Of a DNA stretch of 64,000 bases, positions 3,227 through 37,175 are shown in pieces; the first letter of the stretch is position 1, and the number at the start of each line of letters is the position of its first letter. The stretch spans positions 124,001-188,000 of the IMG/VR virus record IMGVR_UViG_3300020084_000003; one strand, 5' to 3'. The notes under the pieces were generated by a model, which was given only the letters and a program-made list of their open reading frames with translations, searched no databases and was not told where the DNA came from. The position numbers and the translations under genes were made by a program.

Positions 3227-3485
3227 TTTGAGACACAACTAGGCAAAAGAACAAACCGTGAACAAAAAATCAGCTTGACAAAAATCGTGATTCTAAGATA
3301 TTCTGGTGGTGGACCCGAATCGAAATATGAGAATCAAAAAGAGCCAAGAATATCATAGGATCGAAACATGCGTCAAGTAAAAATAAGAACGAGGTTTTTT
3401 CATTTTAGGGCTTGCATTGAGATTGATTCTTCCCTAGATATGAAATCACCGAAACGGCGAACCCGCCAGCAAAAGGACAGTTATC

Positions 3486-3674
3486 ATGACCTACGATCAA
3501 GCCAATGCCGCCGCCCGCGTCCTGCGTGAAGCTGGTCAATATGATGCAGCAGAACATATGGAGGTAGTCGCGGAAACTGCCCGTCGCCAGCATTTCCAAG
3601 ACATGGCACAGAAATGCTATGACGACCCGGATTTTGCACTAGCCTATGAAGAGGACATGCGAGAATTTAGATAG
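3486..3674 (+). CDS. Small hypothetical early protein
   Basis: Own promoter, AAGGA RBS, and a terminator AAAAAGCCCTTTGGGGCTTTTTT at 3676-3700. Confidence 0.75.
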   Translation: MTYDQANAAARVLREAGQYDAAEHMEVVAETARRQHFQDMAQKCYDDPDFALAYEEDMREFR

Positions 3675-4000
3675 GAAAAAAGCCCTTTGGGGCTTTTTTT
3701 AATGCGTCCTGAGAACAAAACGTGAACGTGAAAACACCCCTGTTTTTGGCCTCTGAGCGGCCTTTGATGTTTCCGGGTAGGGTGATGAGGCATGACGGCG
3801 CAACGGGCTTCTACGGGCAAAATAGAGCGTCTGGGAACGTGTCTGCATCGGAACATGAGTCTTAGGGTATCAACTCGGCAAAAGAACAAACCATGAACAA
3901 AAAAAGATTCAAAAAAATGCGTTTTCCCTATTGCGAATCGGAACGGGAACGCATATTCTTTAGTTATAGAGACAGACACACACCAACCCCGGAGGCTACC

Positions 4001-4234
4001 ATGACCGCTCGCATCCAACTCGACACCTTCAACGGTCGCGGCTCGCAGCATCACCTGAAAAATCCGAAGACCCCGGCAGAAGAAAAAGCCCTGATCGCGG
4101 GCGGCTCTAAAGTCCGGTTTCAATCCACCCCTATCTCGAAAAAAGAAGAGGCGGAAAATTTCATCGCCGCCCGTGCGAAACTCGCCCGCAACAGCAAGGC
4201 AAAAGTCACTCTGGAAAAAGCCCCTTGGGAATAA
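4001..4234 (+). CDS. Small basic protein, VxLxxxPW-tail family (MTARIQLDTFNGRGSQHHLK...VTLEKAPWE)
   Basis: GGAGG RBS at 3991. Close paralog of 7841-8071. Confidence 0.8.
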   Translation: MTARIQLDTFNGRGSQHHLKNPKTPAEEKALIAGGSKVRFQSTPISKKEEAENFIAARAKLARNSKAKVTLEKAPWE

Positions 4235-4485
4235 GGGGAACGGGCGGGGGAAACCCCGCCTTCCTTGTTTCACGTGAAACAATCTCGCAATGAAAAAAGT
4301 TGAAAAAGGGGATTGACCAAAATCAGCAAGGCATGATATTCTGAAATAGAATCAAAAATTTTTTAGATGATTCGCATGAAGATTCTATTTCAGAATATCA
4401 CCGAATCACGATATCCGTCAAGAGGAAAAATCGTTCACGTTTTGTTCTCTATGGGGAAAAAGAAAAAGCCCCGAAGGGCTTGATC

Positions 4486-4764
4486 TTATGCCGCGAGGGC
4501 TTTCATCAAAATGTCTTCAAGTTCGGTTTCTTCCGGTTCATCTTCATAGATGCGGTTTTCCATGAAGAGCGGACCTTGCCACTTGTCCAACATGAAATTG
4601 AATTGCTTGCGGACAAGGCGCATTTTCCACTGAGTCCGAACCGAAATGAATTCGTCCATATAGAAAGAGGTATCAAATTCCATGATTTCCGAAAAAGTCA
4701 TGGCGGCGATTTCCGCGCGGATGGCGACGAAAGCAGCGCGGGCGAGTTTTTTGGATGTAAACAT
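4486..4764 (-). CDS. Hypothetical early protein (MFTSKKLA...)
   Basis: AAAGGA RBS and terminator AAAAAGCCCCGAAGGGCTT. Confidence 0.7.
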   Translation of the reverse strand: MFTSKKLARAAFVAIRAEIAAMTFSEIMEFDTSFYMDEFISVRTQWKMRLVRKQFNFMLDKWQGPLFMENRIYEDEPEETELEDILMKALAA

Positions 4765-4991
4765 GGCTGATCCTTTCCAGATCAAGAGGGTTAAAGCTGG
4801 CCGGAACCTCGTTCCGTTAAGACATAGATAGACCATGATTCTGATTCCCGCAAGAGATATTTTCAACTATTTTTCAGTTATTTTGGGGATTGACGCATTG
4901 CAATATCCTATGATATTCTTCCCGCCAGACCGAATCACGTTCACGTTTTGTTCTCTATAGGGAAAAAGAAAAAGCCCCGAAGGGCTTGATC

Positions 4992-5114
4992 TTATTTTTC
5001 CCAAGGGGCTTTTGGCAGGCTGACCGGTTTTTTCGGGGTTTCCACTACCATCTGCGCGAGTTTGGCATCGGTGGAGTTGAGGGCAGTCACTTGGATCATC
5101 TTTTGAACGAACAT
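4992..5114 (-). CDS. 40-aa peptide, VxLxxxPW-tail family (MFVQKMIQVTAL...PVSLPKAPWEK); not in the ORF track
   Basis: Read by hand. It has an AAGGA RBS, an upstream promoter and a downstream terminator. Confidence 0.7.
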   Translation of the reverse strand: MFVQKMIQVTALNSTDAKLAQMVVETPKKPVSLPKAPWEK

Positions 5115-5488
5115 TTCCGGTCTTCCTTCTCTGGACGCGACCCCTTGCCGCGTTTCCTGATTCCTAGATAGGCCATGATGGCGAGTCGTGCAAGAGGAAA
5201 AATGAAAAAAGTTTGCCCGCCGTAGACCCCTCTATTTTGGCCTGTGACGGGCATTGACGTTTCCGGGTAGGGCGATGCCCCTGTGAGCCTTGCGGGGCTT
5301 CCTACCGCGCCACAGCGACTAGGACGACATACCCCGGACGATCCAGACGTATTTTGTGACGAAAGGAATTGTGCGGATAGTCGGCACGGAATTTCTCGAC
5401 AGTCCGCACAAATAGGTCAGGGAATTGAGTCGCCCATGATACCATCATTTCAACTGTGACAGATGCGAGTCTTGGCTTTTGCATTTTG

Positions 5489-5923
5489 TTATCCCCATTT
5501 ATCAAATAGATTTCGACATTCATTATGCCATTCTTTCACAGATTTATTATATTCCAAATCACCTTTTAGAAATTCAGCATATGAAATTGCATCCTTTTCT
5601 CGGAAGAAAAGGAAATGGGCGTTGTATCCATTAAGCCCGCCGATATTGTAATCTTTAAGTGATCCGCCAGAAGAATATTCTTCACCCGTATATTGTGAAA
5701 TATAGGTATATGCAAAAGAACCTTTTTTGGTAAATGTTTCATCTTCATATTCAACGCCATTAATTTCATTAAATGACGCAATTTTAGTGAAATGTCTTTT
5801 AGCCAAATACCCGCCTTGCGATACTTCCCAAATATCGGAACCAGTGAGCAAATGCATTTGCTCGACTGTTTCAATTGCGCCTTTAGGATATTCCCGCGCA
5901 GTTGTTCCTTTAAGTTTAATCAT
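5489..5923 (-). CDS. Hypothetical protein
   Basis: 144-aa ORF with an AAGGA RBS. Confidence 0.65.
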   Translation of the reverse strand: MIKLKGTTAREYPKGAIETVEQMHLLTGSDIWEVSQGGYLAKRHFTKIASFNEINGVEYEDETFTKKGSFAYTYISQYTGEEYSSGGSLKDYNIGGLNGYNAHFLFFREKDAISYAEFLKGDLEYNKSVKEWHNECRNLFDKWG

Positions 5924-5952
5924 GTCTTTATCCTTTCCCTATATGTGGCCCC

Positions 5953-6219
5953 TTATCGGGACCACTTGCGATTGATGTTCCACTTTTCCACGACGAGTCC
6001 CGTTTCCGTTTCATCCGTCACGATATACGCGACAGTTTTCTTGACGAGGGCGAAACGGGTTTCTTGATTTGGCCCGACAAAAACCAGATGTTTATAATCG
6101 CGAAATTTGTCCTCGGGGAACGCAGTTGCGTTCATATACTCGAAAGTTTTGCCGTGATCTTTTTCCACGAACATTCCGGCGATTTTGTCTTGCGAGATAT
6201 GAGCGGGGGCATAGGACAT
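5953..6219 (-). CDS. Hypothetical protein
   Basis: AGGAG RBS and own promoter. Confidence 0.7.
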   Translation of the reverse strand: MSYAPAHISQDKIAGMFVEKDHGKTFEYMNATAFPEDKFRDYKHLVFVGPNQETRFALVKKTVAYIVTDETETGLVVEKWNINRKWSR

Positions 6220-6337
6220 GGCGCAACTCCTTTTGGCGCGGTGGGTTTATCCTGTGATACATGATTCGCCTGTCCATGTCAAACCATTATTTCGCCTTGA
6301 CGCACGAAACCGTTGTGTGCTAGTCGTGGAAGTCTGA

Positions 6338-6571
6338 ATGGCAAGGAAAGGAATCATTGTGCTGCCCACATATTACGCAATTGATATTGTTACATCTCGC
6401 AAGGGCTTGCTAATGATGGCGCAGTTTCTTGGGCTTATGGCTTACGGAAATGATTTTGTGCAAGGCAATCGCATGATGACATATGACGCGCGAAACAAGG
6501 TTTTGAGCGTTACGATGACAAAACAAGACGCACTAAAACTGTCGGAAAAATTCAACTTTGAGTTCCAGTGA
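6338..6571 (+). CDS. Hypothetical protein, paralog of 13754-13972
   Basis: Shared PTYYA..IVT...GNRM..YD...DAL.LS..FNFEF. A parS site follows immediately. Confidence 0.75.
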   Translation: MARKGIIVLPTYYAIDIVTSRKGLLMMAQFLGLMAYGNDFVQGNRMMTYDARNKVLSVTMTKQDALKLSEKFNFEFQ

Positions 6572-6756
6572 TTTGTTTCACGTGAAACAATAGCCTTAGA
6601 GTCTTCTAGGCAAAAGAACAAAACGTGAACAAGATTAGGGCTTGACAGCATCATGATTCGATGATATTCTGGACTAGAGACTCGAATCTTCTGGTGATAA
6701 AAATCAGGTTTTACTTTTAGAATATCATATCGAATCGGGGTAAGTAAAGGGGCAAA

Positions 6757-7158
6757 TTATGCCCCCTGAGTCTTTCTTATTAGTTCGCCCATTTCATAGC
6801 TGAACCCGTGCGACCAACAAAAGCCTTCCCGGTCATACTTTGAATTAACATCATCCCCCGTGGCGTCAAACTGCCAGCGGATAACATCGCCCACACGGGC
6901 GTTAAGTTGGACGGCGAGGGCATGAACCCCGCGAATCCAATCATTATATCGGCGGGTTTCATCCTCAACCCGTTGCGCCTCATTGCTGGCGAGTTGCGCG
7001 ACAAGGTAAGAATAATCCTCGTCAAAAGCCTCGACCGAAGCCCAGACGTTCCAGCCGCGCGGGCGGCACCCGTAAACGTCTTTGTAAAGATCGGAGTAGC
7101 AATCATCCACGATCATGCAAACGGAACCAGCGGCGAATTCTTGGTCTTGAGCGAACAT
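6757..7158 (-). CDS. Hypothetical phage protein (YSDLYKDVYGCRPRG motif)
   Basis: AAGGA RBS before MFAQ. The motif is typical of a widespread phage hypothetical family. Confidence 0.7.
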   Translation of the reverse strand: MFAQDQEFAAGSVCMIVDDCYSDLYKDVYGCRPRGWNVWASVEAFDEDYSYLVAQLASNEAQRVEDETRRYNDWIRGVHALAVQLNARVGDVIRWQFDATGDDVNSKYDREGFCWSHGFSYEMGELIRKTQGA

Positions 7159-7412
7159 GGCGATCATCCTTTTTTGCACAGTTTTCCCTCGGAGCATCGC
7201 GCCCCGCAACACCTACGTAGCAGGGAATCACCCTGCTTGTCAAGCGTATATGCAAAGAAAAAATCGAATTATTTGGGGTTGACAGGCCGGGCGATTCTAC
7301 GATATTCTGAAATAGAGAGTCTATGCGAATCACTTGGAAGATTCGAGATTCTATTTCAGAATATCACACTCAGATTTCATGTAAAGATAAAAAAAGCCCC
7401 GAAGGGCTTAAT

Positions 7413-7586
7413 TTATGAAAACTCCCGGTCTACTATTTCCAGACGTTCCCAGACTTGCGCCCACGTGGAGTCGGCGGGAAGATCACACAGAAACATTTCC
7501 GCGTGGAACGTTGCATTGTTTGCAACGTCAATGGCTTCTTCCAGCGACAGTTCGGGGCGGGCTTGGACTTGGGCGAGGATGGACAT
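7413..7586 (-). CDS. 57-aa acidic hypothetical protein (MSILAQVQARPEL...)
   Basis: Read by hand. AAGGA RBS and a terminator at 7390-7409. Confidence 0.6.
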   Translation of the reverse strand: MSILAQVQARPELSLEEAIDVANNATFHAEMFLCDLPADSTWAQVWERLEIVDREFS

Positions 7587-7840
7587 TTTCAGTTTCCTTC
7601 AAACATGGTTGGTTCCGAGGACGTTCCCCGTGCCTCATACGTAGCTGATTCTTGTGTTTGTGTCAATATAGGAAAAGCATTATTTTAGTTTATTTTTGGG
7701 GTTGACGTAAAAAGTGAGTATGATATTCTGGACTAGACTCTTGATTCTCGCGTTCACGATTCGTTCTCATTGTGGGTTGTTCACGTTTTGTTCTGTTTCA
7801 CGTGAAACAAAAGCCCCCCGTTTCCGAGGGGCTTTTCCTT

Positions 7841-8071
7841 TTACCAAGGCATCGCGGGGAGGGAGACTTTCGCGGTTGACTTGCGGGCGAGGCGGGCGCG
7901 GGCGGCTTTCGCGTTTTCGATTTCTTCCGCTTTCGTGATCGGAGTATGTTGAAAGCGGACCTTGTTCCCGCCAGCGATCAGAGCGGCCTCTTCCGCTTTG
8001 CTTTTGGGGTTTTTCAGGTGGTGTTGGCTTCCGCGACCGTTGAAGGTATCCAGTTGAACCGCTGCGACCAT
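7841..8071 (-). CDS. Small basic protein, VxLxxxPW-tail family (...VSLPAMPW)
   Basis: Paralog of 4001-4234 in inverted orientation. Confidence 0.8.
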   Translation of the reverse strand: MVAAVQLDTFNGRGSQHHLKNPKSKAEEAALIAGGNKVRFQHTPITKAEEIENAKAARARLARKSTAKVSLPAMPW

Positions 8072-8619
8072 CTTTCCGTTCCTTCCGCTGTGGGCCTCTG
8101 CCCGTTTCCATACTTAAAGAATATGCACTCTTGATCCGATTCGCAACCCCCCAAATGCACTTTTTTGAATCTTTTTTGTTCATGATTTGTTCTCAGGTTT
8201 CGCGGCGAAACTGCGTTCACGTTTTGTTCTTTGGCCCTCTATTTTGCGCTGTGAGCGGCCTTGTGGGTTTTCGGGTGTGTGGGTATGGCAAAAGCCCGTA
8301 GGAACCACCTACGGGCTTCTACGGGCTTGTGAGAGGCATTATCGAAAACCTAGTGCCGCTGCGAAAAACTCCTTGAATAGATCGAAGAAGATTAGCAGAG
8401 GAAGGATTACCGCCATCAGCTTGATGATGAGATAAACCTTTAGTAGTGTGATGAATGCCCCCATCAGGTTGTTTTGAGGATGTAAAGAGCAGCCAGACCC
8501 AGAAATCCAAACGCTACGATGAACAACATATTGTTTTCCTTTCACTTTCCTAGCGGGTTTCACAGACACAACTTGCCAGCATCAAATTGGTTTCATGATG
8601 CTGGCAAGATTCTTCTAAG

Positions 8620-8745
8620 TCACTCGTCTTTCAACTGAAATTTCTTGTGAACCCCCGACTCGTATTGCTTGCGGGCGCTTTTGTTCTTGCGCGCGTTGCG
8701 GATTTGTTGCTTGGCGTTGTTCTTGTCGCGCTTTTGGTCTTTCAT
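8620..8745 (-). CDS. 41-aa highly basic peptide (MKDQKRDKNNAKQQIRNARK...)
   Basis: Read by hand. AAGGA RBS and an upstream promoter. Confidence 0.55.
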   Translation of the reverse strand: MKDQKRDKNNAKQQIRNARKNKSARKQYESGVHKKFQLKDE

Positions 8746-8962
8746 GATCCGGGTTTCCTTCTGTTTCCGGGTTTCTGTATCTTGAATGTATGGGGGGCCA
8801 GATGATTCGTCAATAGGAAAAAATAGGAAAGATTCTTTTTATTTGGGGTTGACAGTGTGGGGTGGGGATAATATTCTGAAATAGAATCCAGAATCATCGT
8901 TCACGATTCGTTCTCATGGGGTTTCGCTGCGAAACTGTTTCACGTGAAACAATGACATTGCC

Positions 8963-9154
8963 CTAAAGCAATGCCATAAGTTGAAACATGATGATGATAG
9001 CAGACAAACAAATAGTAAGAAGAAACGAACAAGTCAAAGCGTTAACTGTATCTTTAGCAATCGCGCAACGGATGCTAAGGTTAAGCAAAATCAACCCCAT
9101 CATGCAAAACGTAGCAGTAGCGCAAGAAGCGATGAAAAGAAGAAAGTGTTCCAT
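8963..9154 (-). CDS. Small two-TM membrane protein
   Basis: Hydrophobic 63-aa ORF flanked by two parS sites. Confidence 0.55.
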   Translation of the reverse strand: MEHFLLFIASCATATFCMMGLILLNLSIRCAIAKDTVNALTCSFLLTICLSAIIIMFQLMALL

Positions 9155-9218
9155 ACTATTTTCCTTTTGTTTCACGTGAAACATAGGGGCGGGATGATCC
9201 CGCCCCCTGTTGATTGCA

Positions 9219-9524
9219 TCAGGCTTGCACCGCTTCCGCTTGTGCAGCACGTTCGGCACGTTTCGCCGCGTTGCGTTCCATCGTGGCAACCCACGTCCGC
9301 GCACGGCCCGTCAGGGCAGGAACATGGCGCGGACGACCACGCTTGCCTTCAATCCGTTGTTCCTGAATCTCGACCAGACCAGCCTCGACCAGTTGCGCCG
9401 TCAGGTGACGCGAAGGGATGTTTTCAGCATCGCCCGCCTTGATCGCGACCAGCGCGGCAAGCTTGGCCTCTTTGCTGTTGAAGGTTGCCGGGCGACCACG
9501 GGCGGCTTTGATTTCTTTCGTCAT
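9219..9524 (-). CDS. AT-hook (RGRP) / winged-helix-like DNA-binding protein, copy 1
   Basis: Two RGRP motifs and the pattern 'PSRH...LVEAGLVE...RGRP..VPALTG'. Paralogs at 13167, 23299 and 25705. Confidence 0.75.
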   Translation of the reverse strand: MTKEIKAARGRPATFNSKEAKLAALVAIKAGDAENIPSRHLTAQLVEAGLVEIQEQRIEGKRGRPRHVPALTGRARTWVATMERNAAKRAERAAQAEAVQA

Positions 9525-11024
9525 GATGTAGTCCTTTCTTTGCTGTTGGGCGTCTTGCCCGTTTCCATGATTAAGAGATAGAGCATGATTCTGATTCGTG
9601 CAAGCACAAAATGCGATAGGAACGAAAATAGTTTTTGCATCTTCTCGGCAAAAGAACAAAACGTGAACGAATAGGTTTCGCGGCGAAACCACGACGCAAT
9701 GAGAACGAATCATGAACGGTGATTCTGGATTCTATTTCAGAATATCATACTCAGGTTTAGTGTCAACAAGAAAAAAAGCCCCGAAGGGCTTTTCCTCATT
9801 CCATGAAGTTTTCAAATTCTGTCCAGCTATATTCTTCCGCAACCCCATAGGTTTCTTGGAATTGCTTGAACTCACGTTCTGCCGCATCGTGCGAAAGATT
9901 GTAGTGGGTGAGCAGGAGGTTCATAATGTCTGCGGGCGAGAGCATGGCGGGTTCCTTTCCCTTGGCTATGATTAAGATATAGCATCAGATTGTGATTCGT
10001 GCAAGAGGTAAAATGACTTTTTTCAAATTATTTTTGGGGTTGACAGGATAGGGGAGGGGATGATATTCTGAAATAGAATCAAGAATCACCGTTCATGATT
10101 CGTTCTTATAGGTTTCGCCGCGAAACTGTTTCACGTGAAACAAAAGAAAGAGGGGGCGTTATGCCCCCTGTTTCCATCCTTCTGCGATTTTTTCTTGCAT
10201 ATCATCAAATGCGATATGTTTGGGGATAACGGTTTGCGTCATAGCTTTACCATCCCAATACAGAGTCGCAGTTACATCTTCGTGCCCGAAAGTGGACTCG
10301 TAGGTGATTTTGAGGTTGGAGTTGGTAATAGTAATCATGGCGGGGTTCCTTTCCTTTGCCGATTATTCTTTATAGCATTAGCGGCAGGTTGCGTCAACAG
10401 GAAAATGCGTCACCAGATAGATCAAATGAATCCTTTCACAATGTGCGGATTCTTTGAAATAGTGATTTGTTGCTTTGATGAAAGCAAACCGGAACGGGCG
10501 AAATGCCAGACGTTTATTGCGATAGACACGGGAACAGATAGGTTCCCAACGGAAACCGCGCAGAAACTTGTGGTTCCACTCGCAGGAACGATAGTAATGA
10601 GTCAAGTCGCGCATTGCCTTATCTCCTGCTAGGGTTTCCATCTATATTTATAGTTGCACGATTCGGGTGTCTATGTCAATATCTAAAAAATAATTGTGAC
10701 GCGAACATGACACTTGCAAACAACCTAAACGGGTGCTAAGGTTCTGGCAGTTGTAACGAAAGGAGCGAATCATGTTTGATATTGTCAAGAAAATAATTAC
10801 ATTCCCCGGAAAATTTGTCGATTGGTTTGAGGCGGAACGTGGAACTGGTGAAGGAAAAAATGGTTGGGTAGGTAAACCATCGCGGGACTAGGGAGGATGA
10901 AAGACTCCTCTTTTCCCTATTGACAGCATGGGGAGGGCATGATATTCTGAAATAGAATCTTGATTCTTGCGTTCATGATTCGTTCTTTTGCGGATAAAAG
11001 AAAAAGCCCCGAAGGGCTTTCCTG

Positions 11025-11213
11025 TTACCAAGGGGCTTTTGCCAGAGTGACTTTGACTTTCCGCTTTGCCGCTGCGCGTTTCTCTTGAGCCAGAGCGAAA
11101 GCCTTTTCATCTTTTGCGGTAATGGCAGGAGCGGCACAATTTCCGCAACGCTTCTCAAAATCGACCCGGTTCATGTTAGCGTGGGAATTGAAGTATTGAG
11201 CGGAGACTTGCAT
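11025..11213 (-). CDS. Small basic protein, VxLxxxPW-tail family (...KVTLAKAPW)
   Basis: Own promoter, RBS and terminator. Shared C-terminal motif. Confidence 0.75.
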   Translation of the reverse strand: MQVSAQYFNSHANMNRVDFEKRCGNCAAPAITAKDEKAFALAQEKRAAAKRKVKVTLAKAPW

Positions 11214-11318
11214 CGGGTTGCCCTTTCTTGGCTGGTGTAATTATAGAATATGCCTTGCCAGATGATTCGTCAACAGGAAAAATGAAGTTTTTTGAATCTT
11301 TTTTGTTCACGGTTTGTT

Positions 11319-23706: not shown

Positions 23707-24635
23707 GATGTAGTTCCTTTCTTTCTGGGTTGCGGCGTCATTGCCTGTCTCTTTCGATGATTAAGATATAGACGATGATTCTGATTCGCACAAGAGGAAA
23801 AATGCAGATCAGCAAACTTTTTTTCGAATCGGTCCAGATGAAAAGCGCGGGAGAATATCACTGGATAGATTCATTGTCAACAGCTATTTTTGTTTCACGT
23901 GGAACAATGTCAAACAAAAAAGGTGTGACATTTCAGCCACACCTTCCAGTAGTTATAATCTGATATGTTTTTCTTTCAAAAATTACTTCAATCCCGCATT
24001 GCTGCACCGCCAATAGTTTTAAAGAAAGAAAAGTTAGAAGTATCCCTAGAAAAATAGTTTTTGCCCAAAAATTCATTTTGCATTTTGTCCCTTTCAAATG
24101 AAGAAAAATAACACCCATAAAAAATAACCTGAAATAATTACTGTTACTATCCCCACAATAACAGCAATTAATCCCATATAAAATGTTAAAGTGTGAAATC
24201 TAACACCCATGAAATAAATGCCACCAAATATCAAATATAGTGACAAAACAAATGCCACCCCTATTAGAATAAAATAAAAGATGGCAAATGTTTCTATCAT
24301 TTCATATTCTTTCCACAGAAGTTATTTCTAACCCATGATTCGTCAGTATGTTATACACCATTCTCTCACAGGTTGCAACCTCTTTCCATAGAAAGCGCCA
24401 CTCTTGAAGATGCTTCACACGAAGCACATCCTCAACAGCAACGTCTAGATCACGTGGGTTGTTCTTGCTATAACAACAGAAAACATTCATCTTTGGTTCC
24501 CTTTCATAGCTGATGATTCCATTCTAATCTATTTAGAATCAGAAGTCAACTCTTGACAATGAAAGTGGTTAATGATATTCTCTCAAACTGATTCGCCATA
24601 GAAGAAAGGTGTGACATTTCTGCCACACCCCATTT

Positions 24636-25046
24636 TCAGCTAAGAAATTCCCTCTTGACATAATTTTCCAGTTTCCAGTTCCCCTGAATCTGTTCAATGT
24701 CAGGGAAATTGCTATCCCTTGGACGGTGCGGGTCGTCTTTCCCGATTTGAATGACGACACTATAATCACCTTCAACCCCACCATATGCCTTGTAAGCGTC
24801 AATCAAAAGGCTAGTGGTCAAGGTTTCGTCGTCGGCATAGCCGCAACAATCAAGTGCGGATTTGCGTGTCTTAGGGTTGAAATAGACCGTGCCGACCTCG
24901 ATCAGAAAAATATTATCGGGTCCGCCCATTTCCGATTCCGATACAACATCGACAATATCAGCATAATCATCATCCGGGTTGTTCATGCGCCAGAAATAGC
25001 CGCCATTTTCCAGATTCATATCACCGTTGTAATTCCATTTCGCCAT
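24636..25046 (-). CDS. Acidic hypothetical protein
   Basis: AGGAG RBS and cassette promoter. Confidence 0.7.
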   Translation of the reverse strand: MAKWNYNGDMNLENGGYFWRMNNPDDDYADIVDVVSESEMGGPDNIFLIEVGTVYFNPKTRKSALDCCGYADDETLTTSLLIDAYKAYGGVEGDYSVVIQIGKDDPHRPRDSNFPDIEQIQGNWKLENYVKREFLS

Positions 25047-25315
25047 TGTGATTCTCCTATCTGGCGTTGCTGTTGATTCTTTATGCCACATCTCAAACCG
25101 ATTCGCAAGGACTTTTTTAGAAAACTTTTCGCTTGACACATACAGGGTGGGTGTGATATTCTCCGAGACCGATTCGCAATATTGAAATAGGGTGTGACAT
25201 TTCTGCCACACCCCATTGTTTCATTTATCCAAAACCCATTTTCCGTTGACTTTTGTATACCATTTTCCTTTGGTATATTTTTTCGTTGTATTTGTCAGTT
25301 CGCAATGATAAATCA

Positions 25316-25606
25316 TCAGAATTGGACTCCGAACTCGATTTCGATTGCTTGCTCAATGGAGCGTTTCAGGTTGTAGGATTGGAAAGCCCATCCTGCACCA
25401 TAGCGTTTCCCGCGATACTTGTTGCAATAGGCCGGGCGATACCACTTGCCATCCTTGCCCGTGAACATGAATACGGGGATGTAATAGCGCGGGTTGCCGT
25501 TCACGTCACTGTCAAGGCGGATTGCCGAGTCAACGATTCCTTTCACCATTTCGCGGTGTTCTTCGGTGGCGGTAACTTCACGTTGAACTTGAGCGGCGGT
25601 GTTCAT
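25316..25606 (-). CDS. Hypothetical protein (DVNGNPRY...YRGKRYGAGW.FQSYN)
   Basis: AGGAG RBS and cassette promoter. Confidence 0.7.
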   Translation of the reverse strand: MNTAAQVQREVTATEEHREMVKGIVDSAIRLDSDVNGNPRYYIPVFMFTGKDGKWYRPAYCNKYRGKRYGAGWAFQSYNLKRSIEQAIEIEFGVQF

Positions 25607-25704
25607 CTGGTTTCTCCTTTGCTGGTGTGATTCCTTTATGCCATAGTGAAAACGATTCGTCAATAGCAAAAAAGAAAAAGGTGGCTGTTACGCCACCTTC
25701 TCAT

Positions 25705-25911
25705 TCACCCATTATCCGAAACGAATTGCTGGCCCTTGGGCGTCAGGACGATTTCAGCCAGACCCATTTCGATCAGCTTTTGCTGATAATAGGCAGTTTC
25801 GCCGTTGATTTTTTTCAGCGAATTGGCGATAGCAGCTTTGTCGCTGTTGCCCTTGCCCCATTTCGACGGACGGCCACGGCCACGTTTCACTTCTTCGGTC
25901 ATTGTCTTCAT
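25705..25911 (-). CDS. AT-hook / winged-helix-like protein, short copy 4
   Basis: KRGRGRP...KLIEMGLAE..LTPKG. Confidence 0.65.
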   Translation of the reverse strand: MKTMTEEVKRGRGRPSKWGKGNSDKAAIANSLKKINGETAYYQQKLIEMGLAEIVLTPKGQQFVSDNG

Positions 25912-26848
25912 CCTTTCTTGGTTGCTCTCTATGTTCTTGTTATCGCATGTCCAGAATGATTCGTCAACAGCTTTCTTCTACTAGGACAGAAAAAGTTTCA
26001 CCGATTCGTGAGGGCGCGGGAGAATATCAGATTGACAATGATGTGTCAACAAAAAAAGTGTGGCATTTCTGCCACACTTGCCTGTTCCTCAATGATTTAT
26101 TTGCTAGTATCCCATTTGCTTATTTTTATCGGATTGCCAAGAGTCACCGGCATTGGGATGCCCTCGGTTATCCTCTTGCTCTTGCTGCCTTGTATCACTA
26201 TCATTGAAGTTTTCGTTCATTCGATCTAGAGAACCAATTTTCTGGTCTTCTCTTTTATTTTTATTATCCATTTCATACCTCATGTTTGTTACTACTATCA
26301 TAACAATAATATAACTCATGAGGCACTAAATGGTTCCCTAGTCTATAGAGTAAATTGTCGAATATTGCAAAGCAAGAGGAATATATTTTTCAGGATAACC
26401 CTTTTCCTTTAGAAGATTGATATAATCTTGCTCGGTATAGTCTGATTTGATCTTTACGGGAAACCCATAAGCCCAACCACTAGGCGGATCAATTAGAACA
26501 TATTTCACCCTACCAGACCCACCGCTTGCAGTTGGTTTTCAATATCTTCCATTGTGAAAGCAATGTCTGCAATCACAAAGTCAGTCCCGTGACGGGTGAT
26601 TAGACCCATATCAACAAGGAAATCTTTCTGCTCATCTGTGAGGCTAATTTCTTCCCCATCTTCTTTCAGCATATACATGACTATCTCCTTTCGGTTTCAT
26701 TACATCCCTTACTGATAAGTCCCTTATAGCCGATTCTCTTCTCTGATGCAAGAGAAACTTTCTGTTGACTCCTACAACCTTCCATGATATTCTATGGTCG
26801 TTTTCGAATCAGAAAGAAAGGTGTGGCAGAAATGCCACACCTATTTCT

Positions 26849-27448
26849 TTAGATATAGTCAATCCTTCCATTTTCGTTGAAAGTCCATTCATTAATCTCT
26901 GCCAATTCTTTGAAGGATTCTTCGCTGGTTTGATCCTCATAATCATTTTGCAGTTGTTTGTAAAGCCATGCCGACAAGTCTTTCAATACTTGGCGGAATA
27001 CATCTTCTGCATCGCAGCCCGCATCAAGCCAACCATGATTGCGGCGTTCATCTTCCATATCAACGGAATAACCGTGATAATCGGAATAGGTGAATTTTGC
27101 AGAAAGCGAATAGAAGCATTTGCGCTGCATTGCGGAAAGTTCCTTTGCAATGCGATGCAGTTCTTCATCTTGCGGCGCATATTCTTTGATCTTTTTCACC
27201 ATTTCTTTGCGGAAATAGTAATAGCCAGAAAATGCCGCATAGCTTCCCTGATGATAGAAACCGGAGAATTGAACATCTTTCGACTTTACTTTAAAGCCGA
27301 GAATTTCGCAGATTTGCAGGAAGTCATCATATACACCATCCCACCAGTCATGATTGCAGGCATAGCGCGAGATAGCTTCTTGTTTGGCAGTGTCCGAAAG
27401 TTCCGAGAAGTCATAGACAGTCTTTTCAACCAGTGCAGTGATAGCCAT
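26849..27448 (-). CDS. Acidic phage/plasmid protein (TVYxFxELSDxAKxxA...DWWDxVYDDF family)
   Basis: The N-terminal motif resembles a family often labelled 'antitoxin of toxin-antitoxin stability system'. Its function is unproven. Confidence 0.6.
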   Translation of the reverse strand: MAITALVEKTVYDFSELSDTAKQEAISRYACNHDWWDGVYDDFLQICEILGFKVKSKDVQFSGFYHQGSYAAFSGYYYFRKEMVKKIKEYAPQDEELHRIAKELSAMQRKCFYSLSAKFTYSDYHGYSVDMEDERRNHGWLDAGCDAEDVFRQVLKDLSAWLYKQLQNDYEDQTSEESFKELAEINEWTFNENGRIDYI

Positions 27449-27591
27449 TCTCTTTGATCCTTCTGTTTCTGTTTCCGTTACATCTCTTATAGCCAATGCC
27501 GATGTGATTCGCAAGCACTTTCTTGGAAAACTTCGAGGTTGACAGGGTGATAGGATGATGATATTCTATAGAACAAAACGAATCGGAGACT

Positions 27592-28197
27592 ATGATGTTT
27601 AATGAAATTGATATAAAGTTATTAAAACGATTAATAACTTATGATTATAATACAGGTAAAGCTTTTTGGAAAAAAAGAGACAAAGAATATTTTTATTATG
27701 ACAACAGAACTTTAAACACATGGAATTCAAAATTTGCAGGCACAGAAATTAAAAGCTTAAAAGATGGTTACTATGTTTTTAGACATGAAATAAATGGTGT
27801 TAAATATAGAATAAAATTGCATAGAGTCATATTCGCATATCATCACGGTTATTGGCCTAACGACTTATTAGATCATAAAGATGGAAACAAAATTAATAAT
27901 AAGATAGACAATATAATTCTTTCAAATAAATCTGAAAATGCAAAAAATAGCAAACCAAAAAGCGGCAGTGGATATAAAAATATAACATGGGAACCTAGAA
28001 TAAATAGATGGTCAATTAGATTTAGAGTTTCGGCTGGACATAATATATCAGGTGGTAGCTATAAAAACATAGAAGACGCAGTTAAAGCAAGAAATGAATT
28101 ATTCTTAATATATAATCATCCTCCCGCCAGAGACAATCCAAATTGGGAATATATAAGAGAAAAAGAGGGGAATCAACCCCTCAATTCACCAATTTGA
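27592..28197 (+). mobile_element. Freestanding HNH homing endonuclease with an AP2-like domain
   Basis: 'LHRVIFAYHHGYWP..LLDHKDGNKINNKIDN' and 'GSYKNIEDAVKARN'. AT-rich, opposite strand to its neighbours. Confidence 0.85.
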
Positions 28198-28531
28198 AAA
28201 TAACTTTACCATGTTGCAGAAGTTGTTCGACTACATCATAGCGATAGGTGTCAGGATAATGCCAAAAAGCACCTACAATTTCGCATTCCCCTTCATCGTT
28301 AACATCCATTGACTCGGCAATGCAAATATCGGATGAAAGTCCGACAAACGGGTTTCCTTCACCGGCATCAAAGGGATGATAGCTGCCATTGGCAAAGTAA
28401 TGTTCGAAACCTTCGATCAGGATAAGAATGTCATCCTTTTCCTCTGCCAACTCTTCCATTTCCTCACGAAAATCCTCATGCAACGTGATTTCCAGATCGC
28501 CATTTTCCAGCACCGATGCGTAGAGTTCCAT
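28181..28531 (-). CDS. Highly acidic hypothetical protein (possible DNA mimic)
   Basis: 116 aa, very rich in D/E, with a cassette promoter. Confidence 0.65.
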   Translation of the reverse strand: MELYASVLENGDLEITLHEDFREEMEELAEEKDDILILIEGFEHYFANGSYHPFDAGEGNPFVGLSSDICIAESMDVNDEGECEIVGAFWHYPDTYRYDVVEQLLQHGKVIFKLVN

Positions 28532-28584
28532 TTGGTTTCCCTTTCTGTTTCGATGATTCTTTATCGCATGTCAGAAATGATTCG

Positions 28585-28842
28585 TCAAGCCACCAGTTCA
28601 TCACGTTGCGAGATTTCGCAGCCATGTGCATCTGCATGGGCGATAGCTTCTGCACAAGTATCAAAAACAGGGAATTTCCATGCACAAAGTTCGCCTGCGG
28701 CATTGCGATGTGCGCGGCAACCCATAACATCAGACGTAGTTGCAGGGACTTCTTTGCCCAACACAGTCGGAATTGAGCCAACATAGCCCCAACGCTGAGA
28801 AGGGAATTGAATGATGTGAAGGCCAGCTTTTCCACCGAACAT
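28585..28842 (-). CDS. Hypothetical protein
   Basis: AGGAG RBS. Confidence 0.65.
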   Translation of the reverse strand: MFGGKAGLHIIQFPSQRWGYVGSIPTVLGKEVPATTSDVMGCRAHRNAAGELCAWKFPVFDTCAEAIAHADAHGCEISQRDELVA

Positions 28843-29250
28843 ATTTGTCTCCTTTGGTTTCTCTATGATTCGTTTGTAGCGTATTGAAAACGATTCGTCA
28901 AGCGAGATTCATGCTAACCCGATAAACAGCATAAAAAGATTTTTTCGGAATAATGGAATTTTGCAAAAAGTTCTCCGCAGACTTTTTTTCACAAAAGAAT
29001 GCAGCATCATTCCAATTTTCAGTAAAATAGGCTGCACCGGAATCATAATATGCAAGATATTTACCGTTACCATTAGAAACTACAAACAAATCGTCCATCA
29101 CATTCCCCTTTGCTGTTTCCTTCTTCTAACAGATTCGTTTTGAAAGTGCAAGAGAAAAGATTCCTTGACACCCTATACCAATCCATGATATTCTCTATGC
29201 CTTCCAGACGAATCAATAAGGGTGTGACATTTCTGCCACACCCATTTCTT

Positions 29251-29607
29251 TCAAACAATCTGCCAGACGTGGAAGGCATTATCGCGCAGATTGCGCTCAA
29301 ACCCATAACCATTATCGGTTGCACATGCTTCCCAGAAGTCAAGTTCACGAGAAGAAATATCTTCCGGGTTGACTGCAAGGAGGTATTTGTCAGCAGCAGC
29401 GACAATGGCAGCGGATGCACGATCATAGCCACCACCAGTTGCGCGGGCAGTCTCCATCTTGCGACCAAGCCAATGCACATAGGCCGTCACGCTCAAGCCG
29501 CTCTTGCTGGTATGGGTGATGATGCGGGCGACATATTCACCATTGGATTGAATGGCATAAACCGAACCACCGAGTGCGTTGGACAGTTTTTCGTAGACGT
29601 TCATCAT
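29251..29607 (-). CDS. Hypothetical phage protein (A.GGGYDR.SAA motif)
   Basis: AGGAG RBS and cassette promoter. Confidence 0.7.
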   Translation of the reverse strand: MMNVYEKLSNALGGSVYAIQSNGEYVARIITHTSKSGLSVTAYVHWLGRKMETARATGGGYDRASAAIVAAADKYLLAVNPEDISSRELDFWEACATDNGYGFERNLRDNAFHVWQIV

Positions 29608-29759
29608 TTTTCTCCTGTGCTGGTGTGATTCTCTTATGCCATAGTGAAAACGATTCTGCAAGCGAAAAGATTCCTTGACACCTTATGCCAATCCATGATA
29701 TTCTTTGGCCGTTTCCGAATCAGAAAGAGAAGGTGTGACATTTCTGCCACACCCTTTCC

Positions 29760-30125
29760 TTATCGTGCTGCAACAAAAGTGACGTTGCGCGGGGCATCAT
29801 CAATGTCATAATAACGGGTATCAACTGCCCGATAACGAATTCCGAACTTTCCTTTTGCGAAAGAAACTCCACCTTGAACCCCAAAAAAGCCCATAAAATC
29901 TTTCATGGCTTGGCGAGTCGTGGTGGTCATATAGCGGCAATGGTCAAGCGAAACCTTGATTGCACGGGGATCAGACTCAAGCTCAAACTGAGCAATTTCG
30001 GACCCATGCAGACGGCAGGAAAAGACATTGCCGCCCATGTATTCAATCGTGCGATTGTGACCAACTTTGACTTCACGACCAACCGCTTGAATTTCATCCA
30101 GCGAGATTTCTTTCATCTGAGCCAA
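29760..30125 (-). CDS. Hypothetical phage protein (LHG..IA...TxTT motif)
   Basis: AGGAG RBS and cassette promoter. Confidence 0.65.
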   Translation of the reverse strand: MAQMKEISLDEIQAVGREVKVGHNRTIEYMGGNVFSCRLHGSEIAQFELESDPRAIKVSLDHCRYMTTTTRQAMKDFMGFFGVQGGVSFAKGKFGIRYRAVDTRYYDIDDAPRNVTFVAAR

Positions 30126-30406
30126 GGTCTTATCTCCTATTTGGTGTTTCGTTGTGATTCTGTTTTAGCCTAGCCGAAGCGATTCGTCAAGCTAGAAATT
30201 CACGCACCACCGTTTTCATATCTTCAAATTTTTCAGACTGAGCTTGGAAATTGTAGCCATTAAGACTCGCAGTCCATTTGCCATGACGATTCTTGTAAAG
30301 AACCCCGATCATATCCAGATCATTATTTGCATTTTTCCAGATTGCATAGGTGCTGGCCCCATTTTCACGGGGTTGATTGTGCGAAGAAAAACTGATCTTT
30401 TTCATA

Positions 30407-30688
30407 TTAACCCTCCACAGGAATTTCAATGGAAAGAATGGTATCTTCGGGATACAATTCTTTGAAGATTTTAATGCAATCTTCAACCGTTCCATAAATG
30501 GTAGCAGTCCATTCTTTACAGTCTACATTTGCTGCAAAGAAAGTGAAAGACGAAACTGCAACGTTGTCATCATATTGGCGAACAATATGAAAACCTTTAT
30601 CTTCATTTACCATTTTATCAATGGCAGTTGAAGTCGTTTGAACCAAGAAAATGTCACAAGTGTCTTCATTGACTACAACGTATTTCAT
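30407..30688 (-). CDS. Hypothetical protein
   Basis: Cassette promoter and RBS. Confidence 0.6.
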   Translation of the reverse strand: MKYVVVNEDTCDIFLVQTTSTAIDKMVNEDKGFHIVRQYDDNVAVSSFTFFAANVDCKEWTATIYGTVEDCIKIFKELYPEDTILSIEIPVEG

Positions 30689-31445
30689 CTGATTCCCTTT
30701 CCGTTTCTGTTGTCCTCTTATGCCATCCTCAAAACGATTCGTCAAGAACTATTTTCGAATCACCAAATCTGAAAAAGCGCGGGAGAATATCATAACCTTG
30801 CAACGCAGTCAATAAAAAAGTGGTCGCTAATCATAGCGACCACCCTTGATTTTTGCCTTGTCACGCGAACGCTGCGCTTTAGCAGATTTCGTTTGCGCCC
30901 CTTGCTTTCGCACGATCAGGTGTTGCACGAAAGGGTTGCGGGGTTTGGGAAGCGATTTCTTAGCCATGACAGTCTCCGTTGTTTCGATGACTAAGATATA
31001 GATGATTCGCTTCTTATTGTCAACTACCGAATTCGTGCAACATAATAATCAATGCAACCTTGATAGTCCATCACTTCACCACTACATTCTTGCTTGGCGT
31101 ATTGCAGACGATCACCATCAGTGTAGGGCGGGACACGATCACATGCGGCAATGAAAAGAACCAGAAGACCCACGATCACGAAAGCTTTGTTCATTCTTGT
31201 TCATCCTTCTTGTTGAAGATAAAATGTTTGATGGCGAAAAGAACTCCGACAGCAAATGCTGCCATAATCAGAATAATATTATTCACCACATTCACCTTTC
31301 CATGCCCATGATTTATCTACACAAATTTCTGCATAGCCACGCTCTACTGCATCTTTTTCATACATATCCTTTGCAAGCCAAAATCCAAACAATGCTGTGC
31401 CAGCAACGAATGCAATGATGCAAATAAGATCAATGAAATCACTCA

Positions 31446-37173: not shown

Positions 37174-37175
37174 AG

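What the first reader, a model, noticed from the sequence alone, without database searches (positions are those of the whole stretch)
3240..30850. Phage early region built as an array of host-regulator binding sites (candidate DNA decoy/sponge system)
Seen: the spacers between about 50 tiny genes are assembled from a small kit of repeated motifs. These are 16 GTTC-N7-GTTC boxes, 11 parS palindromes, 5 GTTTCGCNGCGAAAC palindromes, about 16 GTGACATTTCTGCCAC elements, more than 40 gene-less promoters, and GANTC sites throughout. Motifs are often fused end to end, e.g. LexA 7779-7793 + parS 7794-7809, and LexA 10091 / palindrome 10112 / parS 10127. They are also zoned: LexA 3.2-11.3 kb, parS mainly 4.3-16.8 kb, GTGAC element 12.7-29.8 kb. 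Established: these match the alphaproteobacterial LexA box, chromosomal ParB parS and the CcrM/GcrA site. Inference: the non-coding DNA itself recruits or titrates host LexA, ParB, GcrA and RNA polymerase on entry, before any phage protein is made, and the zoning may follow injection order.
Basis: partly seen in the sequence, partly recalled or inferred. Interest (0 to 1): 0.92.

Follow-up and report, generated by a model that had tools for sequence, protein, structure and literature searches.

The report
Repeated promoter-terminator cassettes carrying host parS
About 36 kb of a 285-kb T4-like freshwater phage is built from some 60 tiny genes, each in the same control cassette (terminator, backward-facing strong promoter, forward promoter with methylation sites); a third of the cassettes also hold perfect copies of the bacterial segregation site parS and LexA-type boxes, placed like control sites rather than a protein sponge.

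Summary
The motifs are real and far above chance: 10 exact parS plus 1 near-exact, 16 tight GTTC-N7-GTTC boxes, 5 GTTTCGC-N-GCGAAAC palindromes, 15 GTGAC elements and 42 consensus promoters. GANTC is about 3-fold enriched in non-coding DNA.

They are not loose binding sites. They are parts of one ~150-bp cassette, read here on the gene (-) strand:
- gene stop, then a GAAA-loop intrinsic terminator (the GTGAC element)
- optional parS, palindrome and GTTC box
- TGATTCG
- a strong sigma70-type promoter (P1) pointing backwards
- a 14, 24 or 35 bp A/T spacer
- a forward promoter (P2), RBS and the next gene

Thirty-four of 42 P1 face the 3' end of a convergent gene. Related phages with 71-74% identical RNA ligase keep the reversed P1 but lack parS and boxes in the DNA sampled.

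The window comes from a 285-kb T4-like phage. It encodes a GapR homologue and probably infects an alphaproteobacterium.

Best reading: a PeSL-like hyperplastic region of insulated expression cassettes. parS, LexA-type and GcrA-type sites act as cis-regulatory sites. Decoy function, injection-order zoning and "gene-less" promoters are not supported. Whether host ParB is recruited remains open, and that question is still interesting.

The parts
3240..39131 (.). Hyperplastic array of about 60 mini-gene cassettes. It covers the finding's 3240-30850 and continues to 39.1 kb.
   Evidence: Gene calls, feature map, ORFans plus two HNH endonucleases. GC is 42-50% here against 35-39% in the core.
3275..39131 (+). 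33 P1 promoters on the + strand (TTGACA-N16/17-TGATATTCT, G+C-rich discriminator, TGATTCG 9-23 nt after the -10). 31 of them face the 3' end of a - strand gene.
   Evidence: Starts: 3275, 4313, 4890, 6642, 7279, 8849, 10040, 10920, 12078, 12688, 13045, 14725, 15426, 16727, 17429, 18902, 19669, 20058, 21152, 21488, 21887, 23181, 24553, 25133, 26765, 27539, 29165, 29675, 32425, 32735, 37989, 38745, 39103.
3347..30812 (-). 9 P1 promoters on the - strand. My gene calls show 6 upstream of a co-directional gene; a seventh, at 11245, drives an uncalled 62-aa ORF.
   Evidence: Positions: 3347, 4392, 11245, 13635, 14068, 22465, 23852, 26021, 30784. The promoter at 11245 drives an uncalled 62-aa ORF at 11025-11213.
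12639..30747 (-). P2 sense promoters: TTGACGAATC(G)-N~12-(A)TGGCATAA-NN-GAATCA, followed by an AAGGAG-type RBS and ATG.
   Evidence: Regions upstream of - strand genes. Repeat families D1-D3, D8 and D9. Gap from P1 -35 to P2 -35: 13-14 bp in 15 cases, 22-24 in 5, 34-36 in 6.
15486..29754 (-). GTGAC element, i.e. intrinsic terminator hairpins GGTGTGGCA-GAAA-TGTCACACC plus a U tract (15 copies).
   Evidence: Cores at 15490, 18050, 19726, 21213, 21548, 21946, 22506, 23241, 23925, 24611, 25194, 26060, 26823, 29224, 29735. Called as - strand terminators. dG is -14 to -17 on the - strand and -6 to -11.5 on the + strand.
12158..20141 (-). Other GAAA/GNRA-loop terminators of the same design with different stems.
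   Evidence: Examples: 12158-12184, 12746-12769, 13130-13159, 13980-14007, 14929-14952, 16810-16826, 17484-17507, 18958-18975, 20115-20141.
4266..23906 (.). 11 parS palindromes (10 exact 16-mers, 1 with one mismatch).
   Evidence: Positions: 4266, 6574, 7794, 8936, 9168, 10127, 12135, 13109, 14008, 16784, 23891. The flanks are unrelated between copies, and 9 of 11 lie 2-15 bp from a G+C-rich terminator hairpin.
8197..14038 (.). 5 palindromes GTTTCGC-N-GCGAAAC. Three of them abut parS directly.
   Evidence: Positions: 8197, 8921, 9675, 10112, 14024. The composite with parS occurs in no other IMG/VR contig.
3249..11319 (.). 16 GTTC-N7-GTTC boxes with consensus GTTCAYGNTTYGTTC.
   Evidence: Three position classes relative to promoters: 11 bp upstream of a -35 (3249, 4433, 6616); 31-32 bp upstream (3884, 8178, 11305); 20-23 nt downstream of a -10 (4939, 7752, 8899, 9703, 10091, 10971).
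21419..21572 (-). One complete example cassette between two genes: terminator, TGATTCG-type site, reversed P1, 14-bp spacer, P2, RBS.
   Evidence: Read base by base.
11319..11837 (-). HNH homing endonuclease gene inside the array.
   Evidence: PF13392, E = 3e-15; phrog_99.
27595..28197 (+). Second HNH endonuclease gene, driven by a sense-oriented P1 at 27539.

Best explanation
The region is the hyperplastic (ORFan) region of a 285-kb T4-like phage of a probable alphaproteobacterium. It is assembled from self-contained expression cassettes.

Shown:
- Each mini-gene ends in a GAAA-loop intrinsic terminator.
- After the terminator comes a near-consensus extended -10 sigma70 promoter (P1) that points back at that terminator.
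- Directly back-to-back with P1, at 14, 24 or 35 bp between the -35 hexamers, sits the forward promoter (P2) of the next gene.
- Both promoters carry TGATTCG-type GANTC sites. The sites of P1 and of the core promoters lie where GcrA-dependent promoters carry them (downstream of the start, or near -20); those of P2 lie at about -30 and +1.

Inferred:
- P1 and P2 are host-RNA-polymerase promoters tuned by CcrM methylation and GcrA.
- P1 fires head-on into the preceding cassette. This stops read-through and gives antisense control.
- By the twin-domain effect, P1 transcription puts positive supercoils at the terminator and negative supercoils on P2. Each ORFan is then expressed only from its own promoter.
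- The phage's own GapR homologue, from a family that binds overtwisted DNA, fits such a design.
- The repeated modules are also substrates for cassette shuffling, as in PeSLs.
- The GTTC boxes, the 15-bp palindrome and parS are sequence-specific protein-binding sites added to the leftmost third of the cassettes. They sit at fixed positions next to promoters and terminators. They most likely act in cis as operators or roadblocks for LexA- and ParB-type proteins, host or phage. They are unlikely to act as a sponge.
For: Cassette anatomy.

Orientation: 34 of 42 P1 face the 3' end of a convergent gene.

Conservation: the same cassette with reversed P1 is found in syntenic relatives L154, L156 and L158, with antisense-to-sense ratios of 5-6:1, 3-4:0 and 2:0.

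Promoter signature: the -35, TG and -10 are invariant while the spacers vary but keep constant length.

GANTC: TGATTCG occurs 49 times against 3.6 expected in 3.2-31 kb. 72% of non-coding GANTC sites are YGAKTCK against 25% expected. GcrA's consensus is TGATTCG, and its sites lie near -20 and from +2 to +30 (PMC4647560). Core-region promoters carry GANTC at about -20.

Terminators: strand-specific.

parS: the 16-mer is exact while the flanks are unrelated.

Phage identity: T4-like genes. GapR homologue with E = 2e-19. GapR recognises overtwisted DNA, and positive supercoils concentrate between convergent genes (PMC8360656).

Precedent: PeSLs (PMC4122927).

Distribution: cassettes are confined to this part of the 285-kb genome.
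Against: - No transcript data exist, so P1 activity and its insulating or supercoiling role are inferred from sequence alone.
- Most terminators lack a U tract in the P1 direction, so the fate of P1 transcripts is unknown.
- Perfect canonical parS is not needed for a mere roadblock.
- No ParB, LexA, GcrA or CcrM gene turned up in the ~130 kb of the genome with Pfam labels. Host proteins would therefore have to bind, and this is untested.
- Gene calls in 3-31 kb come from my own simple caller. An independent caller confirms them only for 0-11 kb.
Confidence: 0.5

Rival explanations
1. The spacers are a DNA decoy or sponge that titrates host LexA, ParB, GcrA and RNA polymerase as the DNA enters, zoned by injection order.
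For: - Exact host-type parS in 10 copies, 16 LexA-type boxes, GcrA-optimal GANTC sites and 34 strong promoters without a downstream gene.
- Sites abut each other.
- The motifs are confined to this region of the genome.
- After replication to hundreds of copies, the site number could matter.
Against: - Sites hold fixed positions relative to promoters and terminators.
- The GTGAC element is a terminator.
- Reversed P1 is conserved in relatives that lack parS and boxes in the DNA sampled.
- A single entering genome offers 11-16 sites against hundreds of repressor or ParB molecules (general knowledge).
- T4-type headful packaging gives no fixed leading end (established for T4; T4-type structural genes).
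- Zoning fits local duplication.
Confidence: 0.1
2. The parS array hijacks the host ParABS/SMC machinery. Host ParB clamps load on phage DNA to position, compact or partition the 285-kb genome, for example during a carrier or deferred-lysis state. This can coexist with the cassette explanation.
For: - The 16-mer is conserved exactly while its flanks differ, which points to selection for ParB-grade recognition.
- Eleven sites lie within 20 kb, like a chromosomal parS cluster.
- No phage parAB was seen in the 130 kb sampled.
- Other phage contigs (L046, L085) also carry 5 canonical parS each, between terS and terL.
- A mobile element is known to hijack a helper plasmid's parABS (PMC10954446, abstract).
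Against: - The syntenic relatives sampled (~30 kb) have no parS.
- The phage looks strictly lytic and T4-like. No integrase or plasmid replication genes were seen.
- 54% of the genome was not examined.
Confidence: 0.2
3. The P1 units are genes for small antisense RNAs, like lambda oop. Their 5' parts (box, palindromes) fold as RNA hairpins, and they pair with the 3' end of the convergent mRNA.
For: - P1 is followed within 25-60 nt by a hairpin.
- The unit at 14068 (- strand) ends in a proper terminator at 13980-14007.
- The palindromes can fold.
Against: - The parS and pal15 RNA hairpins are weak, at -3.9 and -3.4 kcal/mol.
- They show no compensatory variation, only exact sequence.
- The GTGAC hairpin carries an A.C mismatch on the P1 strand, and most hairpins lack a U tract in that direction.
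- No Rfam family matches.
Confidence: 0.12
4. The accessory motifs have no function of their own. They are passengers copied along with cassettes by duplication and recombination.
For: - Zoning is present, and neighbouring cassettes are the most alike (93-97% for some pairs).
- Two assemblies break inside a repeat at about 4483.
Against: - Most cassette copies are only 60-80% identical, yet the 16-mer parS is exact in 10 copies with sharp borders.
- The central base of the 15-bp palindrome is the only free position.
Confidence: 0.08

Closest known systems
PeSLs (promoter-early stem-loop cassettes) of T4-type phages (Arbiol et al. 2010, PMC2839356; Comeau et al. 2014, PMC4122927)
   Same: Repeated composite of a stem-loop terminator and a near-consensus sigma70 promoter. 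It flanks ORFans in the hyperplastic regions of T4-like genomes, with homing endonucleases nearby.
   Different: Here the strongest promoter points backwards, at the terminator. A second, forward promoter stands back-to-back with it at helically phased spacing. Both carry GANTC (TGATTCG) sites. A subset also holds parS, LexA-type and palindromic sites. Recombinational shuffling was not shown here.
GcrA/CcrM-dependent sigma70 promoters of Caulobacter (Haakonsen et al. 2015, PMC4647560)
   Same: The TGATTCG / YGAKTCK context, with sites near -20 or between +2 and +30 of sigma70 promoters.
   Different: These are phage promoters, and neither methylation nor GcrA dependence has been tested. The P2 sites lie at about -30 and +1.
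Host transcription-factor sites in alphaproteobacterial phages (CtrA boxes; PMC9437464)
   Same: A phage carrying binding sites for a host cell-cycle or stress regulator in order to time its own genes.
   Different: No CtrA boxes are present here (0 observed against 1.0 expected). The sites are of parS, LexA and GcrA type.
KorB-OB regulon of plasmid RK2, and parS-mediated plasmid stabilisation (from memory, not checked here)
   Same: A ParB-family protein binding a dozen 13-16-bp palindromes placed next to promoters across a replicon. A host-type parS that makes foreign DNA a client of the host's ParB.
   Different: No ParB-family gene was found in the phage DNA examined. The sites are the chromosomal consensus, not a private operator.
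Lambda oop RNA and promoter pO (from memory)
   Same: A short transcription unit pointing into the 3' end of a convergent gene.
   Different: It is repeated about 34 times here, and most units have no evident terminator in that direction.

Membership tests
PeSL regulatory cassettes of T4-type phages | Lies in a hyperplastic region of a T4-like genome, between small ORFan genes | tested here: met
   T4-type core genes. 50 genes of median 92 aa, almost none with a family match, plus 2 HNH endonucleases.
PeSL regulatory cassettes of T4-type phages | Composite of a stem-loop terminator and a near-consensus sigma70 early promoter, repeated many times | tested here: met
PeSL regulatory cassettes of T4-type phages | The promoter drives the gene downstream of the stem-loop (co-directional) | tested here: not met
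   P2 does drive the downstream gene. The consensus promoter P1 is reversed in 34 of 42 copies.
PeSL regulatory cassettes of T4-type phages | Marks the borders of indels or replacements between closely related phages | tested here: inconclusive
   The available relatives are too distant (71-74% RNA ligase identity). Other samples hold the identical phage.
Chromosomal-type parS centromere | 16-bp palindrome matching TGTTNCACGTGAAACA | tested here: met
   10 exact copies and 1 one-mismatch copy.
Chromosomal-type parS centromere | Bound by ParB, which nucleates a partition complex | not testable with these tools
   Needs EMSA or ChIP.
Chromosomal-type parS centromere | Cognate parA/parB on the same replicon | tested here: inconclusive
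   None found among 40 window proteins, nor in Pfam labels for contig ~95-124 kb and 188-225 kb. 54% of the genome was not seen.
Alphaproteobacterial LexA (SOS) box | Direct repeat GTTC-N7-GTTC | tested here: met
   17 copies against 1.9 expected. Motif as given in PMC12700426.
Alphaproteobacterial LexA (SOS) box | Operator position overlapping or just downstream of a promoter | tested here: inconclusive
   Six boxes start 20-23 nt after a -10. Six others lie 11 or 31-32 bp upstream of a -35, which is more like an activator site.
Alphaproteobacterial LexA (SOS) box | Binding by host LexA | not testable with these tools
   The host is unknown. The same 11-bp unit forms tandem arrays of 6-13 overlapping boxes in other phage contigs (L001, L023, L024). 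That leaves another binding protein possible.
GcrA/CcrM-type methylated promoter | GANTC in the YGAKTCK context | tested here: met
   137 of 190 non-coding sites, including 54 exact TGATTCG.
GcrA/CcrM-type methylated promoter | Site near -20 or between +2 and +30 of a sigma70 promoter | tested here: met
   P1 sites lie 9-23 nt after the -10. Core promoters carry the site at about -20. P2 sites lie at about -30 and +1.
GcrA/CcrM-type methylated promoter | Methylation-dependent activation by GcrA | not testable with these tools
   Needs in vitro transcription or reporter assays.
DNA decoy / sponge for host regulators | Sites placed without regard to transcription units, in numbers that can compete with the host's own sites | tested here: not met
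   Positions are quantised relative to promoters and terminators. There are only 11-16 sites per genome.

The most novel reading that the evidence does not exclude
A lytic T4-like jumbo phage has written the host's own cell-cycle grammar into its early region: chromosomal parS, LexA-type boxes and GcrA-optimal methylation sites. Host ParB clamps, LexA and GcrA then assemble on phage DNA. ParB loading at 11 sites would make the phage genome a client of the host segregation and condensin system, or would sabotage that system once the genome is replicated. The backward promoters would act as a built-in supercoiling and insulation device served by a phage GapR.
Probability: 0.2. Interest if true: 0.85.

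Novelty: new variant of a known kind. Interest (0 to 1): 0.6.

Why it matters
Hyperplastic regions of T4-like phages hold most of their unknown genes, and how those genes are controlled and shuffled is poorly understood.

This array shows a more elaborate cassette than the described PeSLs. It has a conserved antisense promoter, phase-locked to the sense promoter, and methylation sites of the type used by the alphaproteobacterial cell-cycle factor GcrA.

If host ParB and LexA do bind, this would be a clear case of a lytic phage wiring host segregation and SOS proteins into its early programme. Two unrelated phage contigs also carry clusters of canonical parS, so host-type centromere sites in phages may be an overlooked theme.

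All of this can be tested with synthetic DNA in laboratory alphaproteobacteria, even though the phage itself is uncultured.

Tried and rejected
- Megablast of 20-kb pieces against GenBank phages: no match.
- tRNA scan: none.
- Rfam at gathering threshold and at E <= 1: nothing relevant, so no known RNA family.
- Relatives in IMG/VR through the RNA ligase: only the source contig.
parS is common in 'viral' contigs, so this was uninformative for this phage.
- Metagenome scan for GATATTCT-N28-58-parS: too loose. Only the source scaffold showed the full P1-to-parS arrangement.
- Genome scan for the GTGAC 20-mer to find the host: 5 scattered MAG contigs from Alphaproteobacteria, Sphingomonadales, Burkholderiales, WOR-3 and an unclassified bacterium. 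No host call is possible.
- The cultured distant relative Ruegeria phage RpAliso: none of the motifs, and GANTC is depleted.
- CtrA and DnaA boxes: not enriched.
- Sigma54 promoter, CRP-like operator or CRISPR-repeat mimic as readings of the GTGAC element: considered and dropped in favour of a terminator, on strand asymmetry and U tracts.
- Replication-origin reading of the 3-11 kb zone: the genes converge on it rather than diverge, and there are no DnaA boxes. Not pursued.
- Walk along the contig for ParB, LexA, GcrA or CcrM genes: none in about 130 kb, but a GapR homologue was found.

Full report
SOURCE AND IDENTITY. The window is bases 124,004-188,003 of IMG/VR contig IMGVR_UViG_3300020084_000003, which is 284,776 bp long. 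The same phage, 100% identical, is in JGI sample 3300020083 and two Logan assemblies.

It is a T4-like jumbo phage. Inside the window are rIIA, rIIB, a Dda-type helicase, DNA ligase and RNA ligase 1. In the flanks are gp23-type capsid, T4 portal, sheath, tube, gp32, gp59, UvsX, a gp41-type helicase, a late-transcription coactivator, and ribonucleotide reductase, thymidylate synthase and NAD-salvage genes.

No GenBank phage is close at the DNA level. The nearest rIIA sequences, at about 50% identity over the N-terminal part, belong to phages of Rhodobacterales. About 18.7 kb left of the window the phage encodes a GapR homologue (PF10073, E = 2e-19). GapR is described as an alphaproteobacterial nucleoid protein (abstracts of PMC13408042 and PMC8360656). 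Together with the GANTC data below, an alphaproteobacterial host is likely but not proven.

parS occurs 10 times exactly and once with one mismatch, against 0.07 expected. GTTC-N7-GTTC occurs 17 times against 1.9 expected, and 16 copies share GTTCAYGNTTYGTTC. The 15-bp palindrome occurs 5 times. The GTGAC element occurs 15 times at up to one mismatch, against 0.05 expected. A promoter of the form TTGACA-N16/17-(TG)ATATTCT occurs 42 times.

GANTC is enriched only in the non-coding DNA of 3.2-40 kb, at about 12 per kb against 3.7 expected.

Strict versions of the cassette occur nowhere else in the 285-kb genome.

ANATOMY. From about 9 kb rightwards nearly all genes lie on the - strand. An independent gene caller agrees for 0-11 kb. 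Read on that strand, almost every intergenic spacer has the same order:
- the stop codon
- a hairpin with a GAAA loop, followed by a U tract
- optionally parS, the 15-bp palindrome and a GTTC box
- a TGATTCG-type GANTC site
- a G+C-rich stretch
- the reverse complement of the consensus promoter, here called P1
- an A/T-rich spacer
- a second promoter in the gene's direction, here called P2: TTGACGAATC, about 12 bases, TGGCATAA, two bases, GAATCA
- an AAGGAG-type ribosome site and ATG

The GTGAC element is the commonest hairpin of this design. The terminator scan calls it, and its variants, on the - strand. It is 5-6 kcal/mol more stable there, because a G.U pair becomes an A.C mismatch on the other strand. 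It is therefore an intrinsic terminator, not a regulator site.

THE 'GENE-LESS' PROMOTERS. Thirty-four of 42 P1 copies face the 3' end of a convergent gene, and 8 face the start of a co-directional gene. P1 has the signature of a working promoter. The -35, TG and -10 are invariant, while the spacers differ in sequence but not in length. It also drives real genes in a few places, for example the HNH gene at 27595.

The gap between the -35 hexamers of P1 and P2 falls into three classes: 13-14 bp (15 cases), 22-24 bp (5 cases) and 34-36 bp (6 cases). These are steps of one helical turn. This argues that the two promoters are coupled on one face of the DNA.

Three syntenic contigs from other samples have RNA ligases 71-74% identical to this phage's. 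They carry the same cassette, again with P1 reversed relative to the genes in 10-12 of 11-13 copies. The reversed promoter is therefore a conserved feature of this phage clade.

GANTC. In the non-coding DNA of 3.2-40 kb, 72% of GANTC sites have the YGAKTCK context, against 25% expected and 27% in coding DNA. Fifty-four sites are exactly TGATTCG. In 3.2-31 kb there are 49 TGATTCG against 3.6 expected.

Haakonsen et al. report TGATTCG/YGAKTCK as the GcrA-preferred methylation site. They place such sites in GcrA-regulated promoters near -20 and from +2 to +30 (PMC4647560). P1 carries its site 9-23 nt after the -10. Sense promoters in the conserved core of the window carry one at about -20. P2 carries two, at about -30 and +1.

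The GANTC sites are therefore promoter parts, most simply for methylation- and GcrA-tuned transcription by the host polymerase.

parS, PALINDROME AND GTTC BOXES. All three are discrete elements. The parS 16-mer is exact in ten copies whose flanks are unrelated. The palindrome varies only at its centre. As RNA hairpins they would be weak, at -3.9 and -3.4 kcal/mol. Protein recognition of DNA is therefore the better reading.

Their positions are not free. Nine of 11 parS lie 2-15 bp from the promoter-side foot of a terminator hairpin. GTTC boxes lie 11 bp or 31-32 bp upstream of a -35, or start 20-23 nt after a -10. This looks like operators, activator sites or roadblocks.

They are accessory. 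The roughly 30 kb sampled from relatives has cassettes but no parS or tight boxes. The palindrome+parS composite is unique to this contig in IMG/VR.

Whether the binding proteins are host LexA and ParB is open. No ParB, LexA, GcrA or methyltransferase gene was seen among 40 window proteins, nor in the Pfam labels for about 66 kb of flanks. More than half of the genome was not examined. The 11-bp GTTCACGTTTT unit also forms tandem arrays of 6-13 overlapping boxes in other phage contigs. This keeps a non-LexA binder possible.

MECHANISM, WITH SHOWN AND INFERRED STEPS SEPARATED. Three things are shown: the cassette, its strand logic, and its conservation. The rest is inferred.

P1 fires head-on into the preceding cassette. 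This blocks read-through and gives antisense control of the upstream ORFan. By the twin-domain effect it also places positive supercoils at the terminator and negative supercoils over P2.

Positive supercoils are known to concentrate between convergent genes, and GapR recognises overtwisted DNA (PMC8360656). The phage carries a GapR homologue. I put this specific role of P1 at roughly one in three. I put the cassette reading as a whole near 0.9.

The repeats also resemble PeSLs, which mediate cassette shuffling in T4-type phages (PMC4122927). Here neighbouring cassettes are the most alike, and two assemblies break inside a repeat. Shuffling itself was not shown.

THE DECOY IDEA. Several points argue against it:
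- Three of the five motif classes have ordinary jobs in transcription units.
- The remaining sites are positioned like cis-regulatory sites.
- A single entering genome offers few sites.
- T4-type packaging gives permuted ends, so injection-order zoning is unlikely (established for T4, not tested here).

One point remains in its favour. After replication, hundreds of genome copies would carry thousands of parS and LexA-type sites. Late titration of ParB or LexA therefore cannot be excluded.

VERDICT. The array is a new variant of the PeSL kind, with two unusual features worth testing: the conserved, phase-locked antisense promoter, and the array of perfect host-type parS in a lytic T4-like phage.

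Noticed in passing
L046:2657-3444 and L085:10535-11462 (IMG/VR contigs 3300037189_030872 and 3300032247_000416): Two other phage contigs each carry five exact canonical parS sites. They lie in the ~1.7 kb between an Sf6-type small terminase gene and the large terminase gene (the first L085 site falls within the terL ORF), with a portal gene next to it. Host-type parS clusters in phages may be more common than assumed.
   Followed up: partly
L001-L025 and L146-L150 (e.g. L024:5531-5550, L150): The exact 20-mer core of the GTGAC terminator occurs once each in 23 other viral contigs of 29-53% GC and in 5 MAG contigs. One of these is a 70%-GC Sphingomonadales contig, where the 20-mer sits just upstream of a gene start. 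Stem extensions differ, but the core is invariant. Why a terminator core is shared so widely is unexplained.
   Followed up: partly
L023:12449-12609, L024:5420-5510, L001:74-164: Tandem arrays of the 11-bp unit GTTCACGTTTT, giving 6-13 overlapping GTTC-N7-GTTC boxes, lie directly next to the GTGAC-type hairpin in unrelated low-GC phage contigs. They look like iterons or a multi-site operator.
   Followed up: no
L325:19884-20144 (source contig about 105.1-105.4 kb, ~18.7 kb left of the window): The phage encodes an 86-aa GapR homologue (PF10073, E = 2e-19). GapR is a nucleoid protein of Alphaproteobacteria that recognises overtwisted DNA.
   Followed up: partly
window 3275-3376, 4313-4421, 6642-6748, 7279-7385: Four face-to-face pairs of P1-type promoters, with only 43-50 bp between their -10 elements. 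The arrangement is like the convergent switch promoters of some temperate phages. They occur in the zone where gene orientation is mixed.
   Followed up: no
window 4432-4489 and 4938-4995; contig ends of L152 and L153 at window ~4483: A 58-bp box-plus-terminator module is duplicated at 98% identity. Two independent assemblies of the same phage break exactly there.
   Followed up: partly
window 4000-30000 versus 34000-64000: The cassette array has 42-50% G+C, against 35-39% in the conserved core and 32% in the + strand gene block at 1-3.2 kb.
   Followed up: no
window 710-3226 and L151:7103-12517: A run of about a dozen + strand genes of similar size (105-160 aa) at 32% G+C abuts the array. Only one pair (1965-2393 and 2390-2794) is detectably paralogous, at 31% identity.
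   Followed up: partly
L024:5150-5330: Several palindromes resembling Fur boxes (GATAATGATAATCATTATC type, recalled from memory) lie upstream of the GTTC repeat array in another phage contig.
   Followed up: no
window 48425-48868, 50415-50750; L322:4567-5370: The core region encodes a macro-domain protein, a cyclic-phosphate-processing receiver (cREC_REC) protein and, just right of the window, a Thg1-family protein. It also encodes two RNA ligases, so there is a large RNA-repair gene set.
   Followed up: no
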